Below, piece by piece: positions 37,202 to 42,789 of a DNA stretch of 64,000 nucleotides. The stretch is taken from the NCBI RefSeq assembly GCF_000142905.1, contig NW_013657632.1:62001-126000 (forward strand). The letters are read 5' to 3'. Every line of letters starts with the position of its first letter. The stretch's first letter is position 1. This DNA comes from Thecamonas trahens ATCC 50062. Taxonomy: Eukaryota; Protista; Apusomonadida. Below the pieces are notes generated by a model that was not told the DNA's origin, searched no databases, and saw only the letters and a list, made by a program, of their open reading frames with translations. The position numbers and the translations under genes were made by a program.

Positions 37202-39424
37202 ATGGGTGGGGGCGCCGGACTTGTGCTCGGCCTTTGCATTCTCGTTCTGCTTGCTGCTCCTCCCCACTCGGCTGCCCACCCCGTCGCCTGCCCGGGACTC
37301 GTACGCGCCGCTGATCCGGCTGCCACCGAAGCATACGTGATCGCCGGCATGGGAGAGGAGGTCCTGGTGTGTCTTGAGGATGCGGTGCAGGAATGGTTTG
37401 CGTCAGAGTCGGCTGGATACCAGCTCAACCACCTCGCCACCATGTACACCATCGCGGGACACCTGCCGGCCGCCGTCCAGACCGCCACTGCTGTCCTCGG
37501 CTTTGTCGCCCCTGACCTCGCCACCATCCCCGACATCACCGCGCTTGTCGACTACGTCTATGACGGCGTCGAGCAACCGCTCGATGACGACAGTGCGCTT
37601 GGCTCGTCAGCCGCGTTGGTGGAGCCCGAGTTCCCCATCGAGCTGGCCGCAGACGCGCTCTGCATCCTCTCCGATGTCGCCTCGGCCGCTCTCCAGCACG
37701 TGCGGGCACTGCGCCTTGCGCGACGTGCACTTGCGATCAGCCCCGACTCGTATGATGCCTGCCTTCGCGTCGCGGGGCGGTCTCTGGATGCTGGCTTTCC
37801 CGAAGACACGCTGGCTCTGGTCAACGACTGTATGCCTCCGCCTACCGCCTCTCCCGCGCATGCTGCTCTCCGCCACACCGTTGCCGGCGACGCCGCACTC
37901 AAGCTGGAACGCTGGTCCGAAGCTGTTGATGCACATCTGGCTGCGCTCAGCTCCGATCCGGCCAACTCGGACCTCAAGTGGAACCTGCTTTCTGCTACGT
38001 TCAGGCTGGCATCGTCAACCGTGTCTGGCATCGCGCTCTCGTCCAACGCCATTGACCCGGATCTCGCTGCAGAGCTGAGCGCGGCAGCTCGCTTGCTGCA
38101 CGCCAATGGAGCGACGGCGACTGGCCTCGAGCTGTTGGCCATTGCGGTGCGGCTGCCGCGGTCGTCAGTCAAGGTCAAGCTCGCCGCCTACGCCGCCATG
38201 GCGTCGCTCCAGCTCGAATCGGGCGCCAACGAAGCTGCTCTCTCGAGTCTAGAGACCGGCATTTCCATTGCGCCCAAGTCACCTGTCGCACACGCTCACT
38301 TGGCGGTGGCACTGGCCGATGCCGGTGATCCTCGCGCGGCGCTCGAGGCCTTTGCCACCGCCCGGCGCCTGATCACCGCCCGCGACCAGCTCTCATTTGC
38401 GCAGTACGAGAAGCTCGGCCTTGTGGCCCACACCAGCGGTGCCTTTGAGCTCGCCGGTGCAGCATTTCGCAACGCCTCGCGCCTTGCACCGACTACGCCG
38501 CGGGCCTTTATCAACTGTGGTGTCTCGTACGCCCGCGCCGATCAGCTTCGCGCGGCGCTAGCCTGCTTCCAGCGTGCACACGCTCTCGACCGGCACGACG
38601 TCGATGTAGTGCTTGAGACAGCAAGTCTGGCTGCACGTCTCAACCGCTCGTCAGCAGCCATTCTCTACACCCGCGGCATCACTATTCTTGGCCATCGCAT
38701 CTGGCCGCTGTCGCGTGCCACCCAGGGCCACAAGCAATTCCCATCCGAGGTTATTACTTACGCCAAGCTGCGGCGGGGCCTGGCGCGATGGCACGCCGAG
38801 CGCTCTGGTGAAGAGCACCTTGCCCTCGCGTCGTACAAGCTTGCTTTTGACGTGCTGCAAGGCCGCAACTGGCCGCTGGCACTCGAGTACGGCCGCTTGC
38901 TTGCTAGAGACGACACGCTTGCGGTTGCTGAACTTCGCTTGCTGATGGCCCGTGTTCAGCCTGTCGCGCCGGTGGCAGAGTTTGCGGCGCTCAACACACT
39001 GCTGGCACTCGCGCCGCCGCCATCGCCCCTGCCGTCGCTCTCGTGGCGGTCGGCTCTAGCCAACCTACAAATCGGCTGCCAAGCCGCATGCAACGTGACG
39101 GCTGATTTCGACGAGCTGAGCGCGACGATCAAGGCAGCGCGCCGTGCAGAAGCCCACATGCAGGCACTCCTCGCCCATGCTACCGCTGCAGAGAGTGCCA
39201 AGGCCGAGATCGAGGCCTCGCTGAATGCCGAGAATGATCCCACTCGTCGTGCGTACATTCAGTCTGCCCTGCACGATGCCACCATGACCGCGCAGCAGGC
39301 GAGCGCCACCGTCGCCGCTGCTGAAGCTGCGGCATCCGCCAATGAGCGGCTTGTCGCCGACACTCTGGCAGAGCTTGCTCCCCGTGTCATCCGTAAGCTG
39401 CTGGATGCGTGGTCATCGGCGTGA
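37202..39424 (+). CDS. Signal-peptide-bearing TPR protein
   Basis: N-terminal hydrophobic leader; multiple TPR-like units (AHAHLAVALADAGDPRAALEAF, AFINCGVSYARADQLRAALACFQRA). Confidence 0.75.
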   Translation: MGGGAGLVLGLCILVLLAAPPHSAAHPVACPGLVRAADPAATEAYVIAGMGEEVLVCLEDAVQEWFASESAGYQLNHLATMYTIAGHLPAAVQTATAVLGFVAPDLATIPDITALVDYVYDGVEQPLDDDSALGSSAALVEPEFPIELAADALCILSDVASAALQHVRALRLARRALAISPDSYDACLRVAGRSLDAGFPEDTLALVNDCMPPPTASPAHAALRHTVAGDAALKLERWSEAVDAHLAALSSDPANSDLKWNLLSATFRLASSTVSGIALSSNAIDPDLAAELSAAARLLHANGATATGLELLAIAVRLPRSSVKVKLAAYAAMASLQLESGANEAALSSLETGISIAPKSPVAHAHLAVALADAGDPRAALEAFATARRLITARDQLSFAQYEKLGLVAHTSGAFELAGAAFRNASRLAPTTPRAFINCGVSYARADQLRAALACFQRAHALDRHDVDVVLETASLAARLNRSSAAILYTRGITILGHRIWPLSRATQGHKQFPSEVITYAKLRRGLARWHAERSGEEHLALASYKLAFDVLQGRNWPLALEYGRLLARDDTLAVAELRLLMARVQPVAPVAEFAALNTLLALAPPPSPLPSLSWRSALANLQIGCQAACNVTADFDELSATIKAARRAEAHMQALLAHATAAESAKAEIEASLNAENDPTRRAYIQSALHDATMTAQQASATVAAAEAAASANERLVADTLAELAPRVIRKLLDAWSSA

Positions 39425-42043
39425 CGGCTTGGTCGGCGTCCGGAGCGATGCAAGCAGCGTACGCGGGTCCAGAATAGCATCGACGATTTCGTCGTCGCCA
39501 TCGCCATCCTCGGCCGTGTTTTTGAGCATGGCCTCGATGGCTTCGTGGCGCGAGTACGAACGCTTCCGCTCGTTGTCGGCGCGGTGGCGCCTTCGCAAGT
39601 TGCTGATCGAGCGTGACATGAGGGCTTCGGCGGCGGCGTCGTGCTTGGCTTTGGCCTCGCGCCAGGTAGTCACGCCGCGCTTGAAGCGGTGGAGGAAGGA
39701 GAAGAGTGTGTCGAAAAGCGACTCGGGTGCGACGGATCGCGGATCCTCGCCCAGCGACGTCGCAAGCTCGGCAAACTCCTTCTGAATGCTCTCCAAAAGT
39801 GGCTCCAGCTTGGCAATGGCTTCACCGTGCTCGTCGACAAAGTCGAACATGATGCCCTCAAACGGCTCGCCCATGTCGCCGCGCTCCAGATGGGCCTCCA
39901 GTGCCGCAAATGAGCGGCGCAGCTGCTCCAGCTCGAGTGTCACGCGCTCGGTCGAGACGGCTGCTGCAACGTCAACGGCCTCCAGCGCCGCCGGCAGATC
40001 GAGCAATACCTCGAGATCGGGCGACGAGCCGATGACGTCGATGACATAGTCGAGCGCGTTCTCCGGGCCATCGCCACTTCGCGCGTTCTTGGCCCTTGTC
40101 CTGGCTAGCACCAGCAGCGAGTCAAGCTGGATGGACGTCTGGTTGCCGCGGAACGAGCCACGATTCATGTAGTTGGCGACCGCCAACACAAGCGCCATTA
40201 ACTTGCGGAGCCCATCTGAAGTGGTCACATCGCGAATAGCCTTGATCATGGCATCCAGATCGCCCTGAACCGACGCCAGTTGCTCGGGCAGCTCGCGCTT
40301 CAGAATAAAGGCGTCAATACGGTCGCTCAGCCGCGGAAGCGAGCTCAACTCCTTGAGAATGGCGTCGGCAGCATGGAGTTTGGTCCCGCTCTCGCTCACC
40401 GCTGACTCACGCGCCAACGCAGCCGCTTCCTCTGCCGTCGGCACCAGCTTGAGTAGCATCTTGGTTTGGTCCTCGGTCAGCCGCGTCTCGTCGAGGTTCA
40501 GAATTATGTCCTTGATCTGGCTCGCTGAGAGCTTGAGGAACTTTTGCGCAATGCACACAGCCCGCTGGCGCTTGGCCGACAGGACCGAACGGGCAGCCGG
40601 CGTAGGCGACATCGACCGACTCGAGCCAACAGAGCTAACCGATGACCGCCGGTCCAAGCTCGCTGTCGACGCACCCGAGTTGACCCGCGAGCCAAAGAGC
40701 TGGTGGATCTCGGGCAGCTTGAGATGCTGGTACATCTCGCCCACAATGTCGTCCTGACTCCAGAACGAGCGCACAAGCCGCTTTTTGGGAAGCCCCTTGA
40801 CGTCCAACGGCATGAGCTTGCCATCCAGCCCGCGTGGAACTTCGGGCAAGTCACGAATGGCTGACGGCACCACCGTCGGTACCGACTTGCCACGGGTAAG
40901 TCCAGGCGGCGGCGGCGGTGGCGGTCCACTGCCGGGCGGTGGCGGAGCCGGCGGCGGAGCCGGCGACGGAATAAGAATCGACGGCGATGATGCCGCCAGC
41001 GATGGGCCCTGCAAATCGCCGACAAGAAGTCGAACCGAGTCGTCGTCGCCATCGACTTCGGAGCCGCCACGCAACTCCTCTGGGACGGCAGTCTCTGCCG
41101 CGGCGCGCTGCTTCTTAAACTTGGCAAACGCTGCCTGGGCAGCCACCAGCTCATCGCGGCTGGCGGCCAGCTCCTGAGCAAGCTTGGAGCACTTTGAACA
41201 CTCGCCGTCGGGCCCGCTTCCGGCGCCACTGATGAGGGCGGTGACATGGTCAATGAGCGTAGGCGTGTCGTCGACGTTATACGGCTCGAGATTAAAATGC
41301 GTACAGAGGACGGTGCGGATCTCGACAAGCTTGAGGTCCTTCATCATCCGGATTTTGGTCCGGTACCGCTCGAGCTTAGCGGCGAGCTGTTCGCTGAGCT
41401 CGCGGAGGCGATCAGTCTCGTCTTTGGCGGCTGCAAGCGCCTCCTGGGTTGCGGCCAGCTCCGCAGCGACTGCGGACGGACCGGCCGCCTGCGTGCTCGA
41501 CGACGACGCGTCTTGCTCCCACATCAGTTCACGAAGACGCGACTTGAGCAGCTGATTGACCTGGACCTTCTTCCGCAGCTTGTTCTCCAGCGCCTCGACC
41601 CTGGCATCGTTACCCGACTTGAGCTCCTTAACCTCCAGCTTATACTCGTGTAGCACAGCCTTGGTGTTGCTCAGCTTGGCCTTGAGCTTGGTGATGACGA
41701 CTCGCGCCCGCTCGATGTCCAAGCCCTCGAGGGCACGATCGACTGCGAGAGCGTAGGCATCGTCCGGCTCTGGCGGCGCGGTCACCTGCTCATGCTGCGG
41801 CACATCGATGGCGGTCAGGTGCTTGGGCTTTGTGAACAGGCCATGATCCGGAGCGCACACAAAATACACAGTGCCGTCGACCGAGCCATTGTTCTTCCCG
41901 TCAGGCGTCTCCAGCTCCACCCCGATGACGGGGCGAGCATCGGTGAAGGGCCGGTCGTCGCCGACGTACCGCACCACGCCACGCAATAGACCCTTGTACA
42001 GCACAGCCTGGCCCACAGCCACCCCAGACTCTGCCACAGCCAT
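39413..42043 (-). CDS. Formin with N-terminal CAP-Gly domain, coiled coil, FH1 and FH2
   Basis: GVVRYVG...IGVELETPDGKNNGSVDGTVYFVCAPDHGLF; poly-Pro FH1; FH2 motifs VLSAKRQRAVCI, LVPTAEE, ANYMN, FLHRF. Confidence 0.9.
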   Translation of the reverse strand: MAVAESGVAVGQAVLYKGLLRGVVRYVGDDRPFTDARPVIGVELETPDGKNNGSVDGTVYFVCAPDHGLFTKPKHLTAIDVPQHEQVTAPPEPDDAYALAVDRALEGLDIERARVVITKLKAKLSNTKAVLHEYKLEVKELKSGNDARVEALENKLRKKVQVNQLLKSRLRELMWEQDASSSSTQAAGPSAVAAELAATQEALAAAKDETDRLRELSEQLAAKLERYRTKIRMMKDLKLVEIRTVLCTHFNLEPYNVDDTPTLIDHVTALISGAGSGPDGECSKCSKLAQELAASRDELVAAQAAFAKFKKQRAAAETAVPEELRGGSEVDGDDDSVRLLVGDLQGPSLAASSPSILIPSPAPPPAPPPPGSGPPPPPPPGLTRGKSVPTVVPSAIRDLPEVPRGLDGKLMPLDVKGLPKKRLVRSFWSQDDIVGEMYQHLKLPEIHQLFGSRVNSGASTASLDRRSSVSSVGSSRSMSPTPAARSVLSAKRQRAVCIAQKFLKLSASQIKDIILNLDETRLTEDQTKMLLKLVPTAEEAAALARESAVSESGTKLHAADAILKELSSLPRLSDRIDAFILKRELPEQLASVQGDLDAMIKAIRDVTTSDGLRKLMALVLAVANYMNRGSFRGNQTSIQLDSLLVLARTRAKNARSGDGPENALDYVIDVIGSSPDLEVLLDLPAALEAVDVAAAVSTERVTLELEQLRRSFAALEAHLERGDMGEPFEGIMFDFVDEHGEAIAKLEPLLESIQKEFAELATSLGEDPRSVAPESLFDTLFSFLHRFKRGVTTWREAKAKHDAAAEALMSRSISNLRRRHRADNERKRSYSRHEAIEAMLKNTAEDGDGDDEIVDAILDPRTLLASLRTPTKPSRR

Positions 42044-42137: not shown

Positions 42138-42237
42138 NNNNNNNNNNNNNNNNNNNNNNNNNNNNNNNNNNNNNNNNNNNNNNNNNNNNNNNNNNNNNNN
42201 NNNNNNNNNNNNNNNNNNNNNNNNNNNNNNNNNNNNN
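42138..42237. other. Assembly gap (N run)
   Basis: 100 N. Confidence 0.99.
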
Positions 42238-42490
42238 GTATATAGCAGCGAGCCTATATATCCATAGCTATCTACATATATCCGTATATCTACATAGATA
42301 TATATATATCTACCGCAGATACGTAGATAGATATTTATATATAGCTTTATTTCGCTATACATATACCCACATACACACATAGAGATATATAGACACATGC
42401 ATACAGACATACATATACACATATATAGAAACATAGATAAAGATACAGACATATACATATATACATATACATATATAGAGAGAGACATAG
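42238..42490. repeat. AT-rich degenerate (TA/CATA/GATA)n low-complexity tract beside the gap
   Basis: Visible composition. Confidence 0.85.
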
Positions 42491-42789
42491 GCAGAGATGG
42501 ATAGGGGGGAGATAGGAGAAAGGTGGTGTTTGGCGGGTGAATGGGTGGGTGGGTGGGTGGTGGCTACGGTGCGGCACCTGTGGCATTTCGCCGAATGATG
42601 GAAGGGGGGGGGGAAGGGGGGGAGGGGGAGGAGGGCCACCAGCCCACCGCCCCAACTCCTGCCACCACACACACACAGACACGCACACGCATACACACAC
42701 ACCTCACCACAGCCACTAGCCTCACCACAACCACAACCACCACACACACACACACATACACACACATACTCTCTCTCTCTGTCTCTGCC

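What the first reader, a model, noticed from the sequence alone, without database searches (positions are those of the whole stretch)
39413..42043. CAP-Gly-formin fusion: a single-chain microtubule-end to actin-nucleation link
Seen in one uninterrupted ORF: CAP-Gly with GKNNG motif, a long coiled coil, poly-Pro FH1, FH2 and a short DAD-like tail, with no GBD/FH3. Established: CAP-Gly binds tubulin/EB C-terminal EEY/F tails, and in animals CLIP-170 recruits mDia1 in trans to polymerise actin from microtubule plus ends. I know of no characterised formin with this architecture. Inference: a hard-wired version of that module, possibly driving pseudopodia from microtubular roots.
Basis: partly seen in the sequence, partly recalled or inferred. 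Interest (0 to 1): 0.8.

Follow-up and report, generated by a model that had tools for sequence, protein, structure and literature searches.

The report
CAP-Gly formin gene of Thecamonas
The window really holds one uninterrupted gene that joins a microtubule-type CAP-Gly domain to a complete actin-nucleating formin. It is Thecamonas trahens AMSG_08755, already catalogued as an unclassified formin, and at least three other formins in the same genome share the design, but nobody has described or tested the combination.

Summary
Window 39413-42043 (-) is one 876-aa ORF with CAP-Gly (residues 10-75, E 3e-17), three long predicted helices (110-317), two poly-Pro tracts (354-381), FH2 (439-788, E 3e-51) and a conserved basic tail. 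No GBD/FH3 is detectable.

Exact FH2 strings identify it as Thecamonas trahens AMSG_08755, listed without subtype in Pruyne 2017. That paper never mentions CAP-Gly.

A 903-aa marine-metagenome ortholog is colinear end to end and keeps the same TPR neighbour, so this is not a gene-model artefact.

The genome has 19 FH2 loci. Three more carry CAP-Gly and FH2 in one ORF, with FH3 and in two of them GBD, and a fifth probably does. The scan noted that fifth one separately (s1-746493, another contig).

Their FH2 domains are not one clade (AU p 0.0005).

- **FH2 residues:** the knob Ile is kept (I498) and the post residue is basic (R650).
- **CAP-Gly caveat:** this CAP-Gly has lost the conserved pocket Trp (V39) and reads GKNNG, so binding to tubulin EEY tails is plausible but unproven. 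The genome's alpha-tubulin does end in EEY.

I found no paper describing a CAP-Gly formin, but I could not run a full architecture census. My verdict is a real, unremarked variant of a known kind; its function is inferred.

The parts
39413..42043 (-). Whole CDS, 876 aa plus stop (= Thecamonas trahens AMSG_08755)
   Evidence: ORF. Exact FH2 strings in the supplementary alignment of PMC5628938. Colinear 903-aa ortholog P0002.
41819..42016 (-). CAP-Gly domain, residues 10-75, including GKNNG at 41885-41899 (residues 49-53)
   Evidence: Pfam PF01302, E 3e-17. Aligns with CLIP-115/170 CAP-Gly; F33, F70 and K72 are kept, and the conserved Trp is replaced by V39.
41093..41716 (-). Helical, probable coiled-coil region, residues 110-317 (helices 110-180, 191-250, 286-317)
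   Evidence: AF2 secondary structure. Heptad a/d hydrophobic bias and 44-63% identity to the ortholog. No GBD/FH3 homology.
40901..40984 (-). FH1, residues 354-381, with two poly-proline tracts
   Evidence: Read directly from the sequence; 79% identical in the ortholog. A profilin gene is present in the genome.
39680..40819 (-). FH2 domain from the lasso (residue 409) to the Pfam end (788), with a Ser-rich linker at 453-485
   Evidence: Pfam PF02181, E 3.4e-51; mDia1 and DAAM1 alignments. I498 is the knob Ile, R650 the basic post residue, W428 the second lasso Trp, and V415 replaces the first lasso Trp.
39416..39643 (-). C-terminal tail, residues 801-876: basic stretch plus DAD-like IVDAILD...LRTPTKPSRR (residues 850-868 = 39440-39496)
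   Evidence: 57% identical to the ortholog. No Pfam Drf_DAD hit.
42138..42237 (.). Assembly gap of 100 N in the upstream intergenic region
37202..39424 (+). Neighbouring TPR gene whose ortholog also lies next to the formin ortholog (microsynteny). Its 3' end overlaps the formin's by 12 nt.
   Evidence: BLASTP 3e-43 to L001:3186-5696; gene table.

Best explanation
This is a genuine, conserved, single-exon gene of the apusomonad Thecamonas trahens (AMSG_08755). It encodes an unconventional formin with the order CAP-Gly, coiled coil, FH1, FH2, basic tail.

Shown:
- Both domains lie in one ORF.
- The whole length is conserved in an independent environmental ortholog.
- The FH2 keeps the actin-contacting Ile and a basic post residue.
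- Profilin and an alpha-tubulin ending in -EEY exist in the genome.
- The same CAP-Gly plus FH2 combination recurs in at least three other formins of this genome.

Inferred:
- The coiled coil and FH2 make a dimer that nucleates and processively elongates actin filaments using profilin-actin delivered by the short FH1.
- The paired N-terminal CAP-Gly domains dock the dimer on acidic-aromatic C-terminal tails, most likely tyrosinated alpha-tubulin. Actin assembly would then be sited on or beside microtubules.
- Without GBD/DID it is not under Rho-released DID-DAD autoinhibition, so localisation rather than unlocking would be its main control.
For: - **Domains:**
- **Identity with AMSG_08755:**
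- **Ortholog P0002:** 48-53% identical over 99% of the length, with CAP-Gly 56%, helices 44-63%, FH1 79%, FH2 core 56% and tail 57%. It has a conserved TPR neighbour.
- **FH2 residues:** I498, R650 and W428 are kept. Arg occupies the post column in 14 of 35 aligned formins, including an animal DAAM2 and a plant formin.
- **Paralogs with CAP-Gly and FH2 in one ORF:** contigs C9, C22 and C12, and probably C31.
- **Partners in the genome:** alpha-tubulin tail ...DYVEEY and profilin.
- **Precedent in animals:** CLIP-170 binds mDia1 (PMC2606960, listed).
Against: - This CAP-Gly lacks the conserved Trp of the aromatic pocket (V39 here, Ala in the ortholog). The ortholog also deletes the conserved Phe, and the motif is GKNNG or GKHDG rather than GKNDG.
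- The first lasso Trp of FH2 is Val.
- There is no transcript, localisation or biochemical evidence.
- The AF2 model is of low confidence (pLDDT 50).
- The EB1 exon frame found ends in -AVEA, so a CLIP-like route through EB1 is doubtful.
Confidence: 0.6

Rival explanations
1. The gene is real and is an active formin, but this CAP-Gly has been repurposed. Having lost part of the aromatic pocket, it would bind some other ligand: another C-terminal tail, a proline-rich segment as reported for one CYLD CAP-Gly (from memory), or a partner of the CAP-Gly-rich proteome of this organism. The protein would then not be a microtubule-to-actin link.
For: - Trp is replaced by Val or Ala, and the ortholog deletes the Phe-bearing loop.
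- The paralogous CAP-Gly formins keep the Trp, so this lineage is the divergent one.
- The genome holds about 73 CAP-Gly matches, which suggests diversified uses.
Against: - The GK(N/H)(N/D)G loop, F70 and K72 are kept, and the domain is 56% conserved between the orthologs.
- The best PDB matches are the EEY/F-binding CLIP CAP-Gly domains.
Confidence: 0.28
2. The FH2 is not an actin nucleator here. The protein would act mainly as a dimeric microtubule-binding, bundling or capping factor, as some formin FH2 domains and tails bind microtubules directly.
For: - The FH2 sits on a long branch (1.4 changes per column to the clade with its ortholog).
- It scores only 175 bits, against 200-308 bits for most paralogs.
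- The first lasso Trp is lost and GNYMN reads ANYMN.
Against: - The knob Ile, basic post residue, second lasso Trp, and FH1 with poly-Pro tracts are all kept and conserved in the ortholog.
- Several other Thecamonas formins also lack the first lasso Trp.
Confidence: 0.08
3. The fusion is an artefact, meaning two adjacent genes joined by misassembly or sequencing error.
For: An assembly gap lies 94 nt upstream of the ATG. No transcript data were available.
Against: - The gap is outside the CDS.
- An independently assembled metagenomic ortholog, on three contigs from two assemblies, has the same colinear ORF from Met to stop.
- The inter-domain region is as conserved as the FH2.
- Three paralogs show the same combination in single ORFs.
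Confidence: 0.03

Closest known systems
CLIP-170 with mDia1 (animal complex formed in trans)
   Same: A CAP-Gly microtubule-end-binding module is combined with an FH1-FH2 actin elongator. CLIP-170 interacts with mDia1 (PMC2606960). From memory, Henty-Ridilla et al. 2016 showed actin polymerisation from microtubule plus ends.
   Different: Here the two activities are on one polypeptide. There is one CAP-Gly per chain rather than two. There are no Ser-rich basic linkers, zinc knuckles or ETF tail, and no sign of CLIP-170's formin-binding segment. This CAP-Gly lacks the pocket Trp, and no GBD/DID regulation is present.
Diaphanous-related formins (mDia, DAAM, FMNL)
   Same: They share FH1-FH2 with the conserved knob Ile and basic post residue. 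They give the best PDB and database matches. There is a helical dimerisation-like region before FH1 and a C-terminal motif loosely like DAD.
   Different: No GBD or DID/FH3 is detectable, and an N-terminal CAP-Gly is present instead. The FH2 does not group with any animal subtype with support, and Pruyne 2017 left its subtype undetermined.
Thecamonas trahens CAP-Gly DRF paralogs (contigs C9, C22, C12, probably C31)
   Same: They come from the same genome and have an N-terminal CAP-Gly with a C-terminal FH2 in one ORF. Two of them also read GKNNG.
   Different: They are 1646-2021 aa or more. All three keep FH3, C22 and C12 also keep GBD (C9 shows no GBD hit), and all keep the CAP-Gly Trp. Their FH2 domains fall in other lineages of the tree, and one clade is rejected (AU p 0.0005).
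Microtubule-binding plant formins such as AtFH4 with its GOE domain (from memory)
   Same: A formin carries an extra, lineage-specific domain that ties it to microtubules.
   Different: The added domain is unrelated and the lineage is different. I made no sequence comparison here.

Membership tests
Formin (FH2 protein) | FH2 domain above the curated threshold | tested here: met
   PF02181 at 175 bits against a cut-off of 34.8. mDia1 and DAAM1 chains match at E 5e-28 to 1e-24.
Formin (FH2 protein) | Conserved actin-contacting Ile of the knob and Lys of the post (Bni1 I1431/K1601 type; residue numbers from memory) | tested here: met
   I498 aligns with the Ile of the N-x-x-I-x-L motif. R650 aligns with the D-T-K/R column, where Arg occurs in 14 of 35 aligned formins.
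Formin (FH2 protein) | Lasso with two Trp residues for head-to-tail dimerisation | tested here: inconclusive
   The first Trp is V415, also Val in the ortholog and non-Trp in six other Thecamonas formins. The second Trp, W428, is kept. Dimerisation itself was not tested.
Formin (FH2 protein) | Proline-rich FH1 just upstream of FH2 | tested here: met
   Two tracts within residues 354-381, 79% identical in the ortholog. Profilin is present in the genome.
Diaphanous-related formin | N-terminal GBD and DID/FH3 | tested here: not met
   No Drf_GBD, Drf_FH3 or FHOD FH3 at E<=1. hhalign against the paralogs' GBD/FH3 gives probability 0.75%. AF2 shows long helices rather than armadillo repeats.
Diaphanous-related formin | C-terminal DAD (MDxLL core plus a basic stretch) | tested here: inconclusive
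   IVDAILD followed by LRTPTKPSRR resembles the core. The ortholog reads IVSNIID. There is no Pfam Drf_DAD hit, and the motif is too short for statistics.
CAP-Gly domain protein | CAP-Gly fold or sequence above the curated threshold | tested here: met
   PF01302 at 62.7 bits against a cut-off of 26.5. 33 PDB CAP-Gly chains match at E<=1e-3.
CAP-Gly domain protein | GKNDG loop and aromatic pocket (Phe, Trp, Phe) that hold an EEY/F tail | tested here: inconclusive
   The loop reads GKNNG here and GKHDG in the ortholog. F33, F70 and K72 are present. The Trp is replaced by V39, or Ala in the ortholog, which also lacks the Phe loop.
CAP-Gly domain protein | Binding to tubulin or EB EEY/F tails | not testable with these tools
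   The genome's alpha-tubulin ends in -EEY. The complex prediction gave no verdict (see Tried and rejected).
CLIP-170-type +TIP | Tandem CAP-Gly domains with Ser-rich linkers, C-terminal zinc knuckles and an ETF tail | tested here: not met
   There is a single CAP-Gly, no CLIP1_ZNF hit, and the protein ends in ...KPSRR.

The most novel reading that the evidence does not exclude
Apusomonads have hard-wired the microtubule-to-actin hand-off that animals achieve with CLIP-170 plus mDia1, and have done so repeatedly. CAP-Gly is attached to at least three separate FH2 lineages in one 28.7-Mb genome, next to a reported CAP-Gly myosin and about 73 CAP-Gly domain matches. Actin assembly templated by tyrosinated microtubules would then be a main organising principle of the apusomonad cell, for example ventral pseudopodia growing from microtubular roots. 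This short GBD-less member would be the constitutive, localisation-controlled version.
Probability: 0.3. Interest if true: 0.75.

Novelty: new variant of a known kind. Interest (0 to 1): 0.55.

Why it matters
Cross-talk between microtubules and actin is usually built from separate proteins. A natural single-chain CAP-Gly formin, from the sister lineage of animals and fungi, would give a minimal system for testing whether tethering a formin to tubulin tails is enough to site actin assembly. It would also show that the CLIP-formin logic is older or more easily evolved than the animal complex suggests. The recurrence of the combination in several formin lineages of one genome argues that it is selected rather than accidental. 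The limits are that the gene is already in public annotation, its function is only inferred, and this particular CAP-Gly is the most degenerate of the set.

Tried and rejected
- **Trypanosomatid host:** I first guessed this from the GC content and intronless ORFs. It was rejected once the FH2 strings matched T. trahens AMSG_08755. HSP90 gave only weak taxonomic hints, with Amastigomonas at 72%.
- **Word search with the whole protein:** it found only one full-length relative. Poly-Pro words probably filled the candidate list.
- **Third word search, with the C12 paralog:** it returned nothing at all, not even the query itself, so it is uninformative.
- **Representative-library search:** 5492 hits, but only the top 150 can be seen. 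Among them only the query and P0002 carry both domains. This is not a full census.
- **Metagenome scan:** no further ortholog.
- **ESM Atlas:** no large cluster with both families lies near this protein or near the C12 paralog. The Atlas searches only clusters of 50 or more members.
- **Complex prediction of CAP-Gly (1-95) with the last 40 residues of alpha-tubulin:** no verdict (score 0.01). This is evidence neither for nor against binding.
- **AF2 of the full length with a two-row alignment:** low confidence (pLDDT 50). I used it only for secondary structure.
- **Chalkia 2008:** could not be read.

Full report
**Observation.** Window 39413-42043 on the minus strand is one 876-codon ORF starting with ATG, with no stop and no N.
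- Pfam places CAP_GLY at residues 10-75 (62.7 bits, cut-off 26.5) and FH2 at 439-788 (175 bits, cut-off 34.8).
- Against PDB sequences, the C-terminal half matches mDia1, DAAM1, INF2 and FMNL3 FH2 chains (E down to 5e-28). The N-terminus matches CLIP-115, CLIP-170, CLIPR-59, KIF13B and p150 CAP-Gly domains.
- Between the two domains, a low-confidence AlphaFold model predicts three long helices at 110-180, 191-250 and 286-317. A simple register scan shows a/d hydrophobic bias in each.
- Residues 354-381 hold two poly-proline tracts.
- No GBD or FH3 model matches even at E<=1. A profile-profile comparison of the helical region with the GBD/FH3 regions of four paralogs gives probability 0.75%.
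- The tail (801-876) has a basic stretch and an IVDAILD...LRTPTKPSRR motif that loosely resembles a DAD. It is too short to test.
- A 100-N gap lies 94 nt upstream of the ATG in pyrimidine-rich, repeat-rich intergenic DNA. It does not touch the CDS.

**Identity.** Three FH2 strings of this protein occur letter for letter in the row 'Tt AMSG_08755' of the supplementary FH2 alignment of Pruyne 2017 (PMC5628938). The genome (28.7 Mb, 131 contigs) is therefore Thecamonas trahens or a near-identical strain.
- In that paper's table the protein has subtype 'n.d.'.
- The main text contains no occurrence of 'CAP-Gly'. It says only that remaining apusozoan formins are Drf-type, 'often supplemented with additional domains'.
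- The locus tag appears in no main text of the searchable library.

**Is the fusion real?** Four lines of evidence say it is.
- The only full-length relative in a 5.8-billion-protein word search and in a 1.84-billion-representative HMMER search is P0002 (903 aa). It is encoded on three contigs from Tara Oceans and ENA marine assemblies.
- P0002 aligns from the first Met to the last residues. Identity by region is CAP-Gly 56%, helices 59, 63 and 44%, FH1 79%, FH2 core 56% and tail 57%. The inter-domain part is as constrained as the catalytic domain.
- The adjacent TPR gene (window 37202-39424) is orthologous to the gene next to P0002 (E 3e-43), although its orientation differs.
- The start codon agrees with the ortholog's.

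I rate an artefact at about 3%.

**A family, not a singleton.** The genome has 19 FH2 loci and 73 CAP-Gly matches.
- Three further open frames hold both domains.
  - C9 (2021 aa): CAP-Gly, FH3, FH2.
  - C22 (frame of 1773 aa): two CAP-Gly matches, GBD, FH3, FH2.
  - C12 (1646 aa): CAP-Gly, GBD/FH3, FH2.
- On C31, an ORF with two CAP-Gly domains overlaps, in another frame, an ORF with GBD-FH3-FH2. This is the 'giant' candidate that the scan noted earlier (s1-746493).
- In a careful FH2 tree, the CAP-Gly formins fall in at least three places: C9 with C31; C22 with C12 and the CAP-Gly-less C44; and this protein with P0002 on a long branch.
- The AU test rejects a single clade (p 0.0005). Long branches are in play.
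- So either CAP-Gly was joined to formins more than once or moved between paralogs, or an old fusion was lost several times.

**Functional residues.**
- *FH2*:
  - The knob Ile is kept (I498).
  - The post Lys column holds R650. Arg is there in 14 of 35 aligned formins, including an animal DAAM2 and a plant formin.
  - The second lasso Trp is kept (W428). The first is V415, as in the ortholog and in several other Thecamonas formins.
  - GNYMN reads ANYMN.
- *CAP-Gly*:
  - The loop is GKNNG here and GKHDG in the ortholog. Two paralogs also read GKNNG.
  - F33, F70 and K72 are kept.
  - The conserved Trp before G-V-E-L is V39, or Ala in the ortholog. The ortholog also lacks the eight residues that carry the Phe. 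The paralogs keep the Trp.
- *Possible partners in the genome:*
  - Alpha-tubulin ends in ...DYVEEY and beta-tubulin in ...YEPEY.
  - The one EB1-domain exon frame ends in ...EAVEA.
  - Profilin is present.

**Mechanism.** The most likely reading (about 0.6) has three inferred steps.
- The protein forms a coiled-coil and FH2 dimer that nucleates and elongates actin with profilin.
- The two CAP-Gly heads position it on acidic-aromatic tails, most plausibly tyrosinated alpha-tubulin.
- Having no GBD/DID, it is controlled by where it sits rather than by Rho release.

None of these steps is shown. The main rival (about 0.28) is that this degenerate CAP-Gly binds something else. Minor rivals are an FH2 that does not nucleate (0.08) and an artefact (0.03).

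**Comparison and novelty.**
- In function it would resemble the animal CLIP-170-mDia1 pair (PMC2606960) on a single chain.
- It is a member of the formin family.
- It is not a Diaphanous-related formin, because GBD/FH3 was tested and not met.
- It is not a CLIP-type +TIP, having a single CAP-Gly, no zinc knuckle and no ETF tail.
- Full-text searches found eight papers with CAP-Gly, formin and FH2, none about a fusion, and none with CAP_GLY and FH2.
- Two broad surveys of formin architectures do not mention CAP-Gly.
- Nearby Atlas clusters of 50 or more members never combine the two families.
- I could not run a complete architecture census, and the gene is already in public annotation.

I therefore rate it a new variant of a known kind, with interest 0.55.

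Noticed in passing
G000 whole genome: There are about 73 CAP-Gly domain matches in a 28.7-Mb genome, many in tandem within one open frame. This is a marked expansion of the domain in Thecamonas.
   Followed up: partly
L032 and L034 (G000:C1:222061-225450; C38:232462-235827): Alpha-tubulin ends in ...DYVEEY. Beta-tubulin also ends in an acidic-aromatic tail, ...YEPEY, so both could be CAP-Gly ligands.
   Followed up: no
L031:1423-1650:+ (G000:C3): The only EB1-domain match lies in a 75-codon frame that ends ...DEAVEA before a stop, without a terminal aromatic residue. A further exon cannot be excluded.
   Followed up: no
L027:2852-6238:- and L026:2002-8559:- (G000:C31): A 1129-aa ORF with two CAP-Gly domains overlaps, by about 200 nt and in another frame, a 2186-aa open frame with GBD-FH3-FH2. 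This is either a frameshift or intron in a giant CAP-Gly formin, or two genes.
   Followed up: partly
P0153 and P0161 (representative library): Unnamed proteins carry three (P0153, 1021 aa) or two (P0161, 1641 aa) complete FH2 domains in tandem, which is unusual for formins.
   Followed up: no
window 42240-42700: The divergent intergenic region upstream of the formin is low-complexity (TATATG/CATA repeats, GT/CA runs, poly-C). GC drops to about 55%, and the region holds the assembly gap.
   Followed up: no
window 39413-39424: The convergent formin and TPR genes overlap by 12 nt at their 3' ends, which shows how compact this genome is.
   Followed up: no
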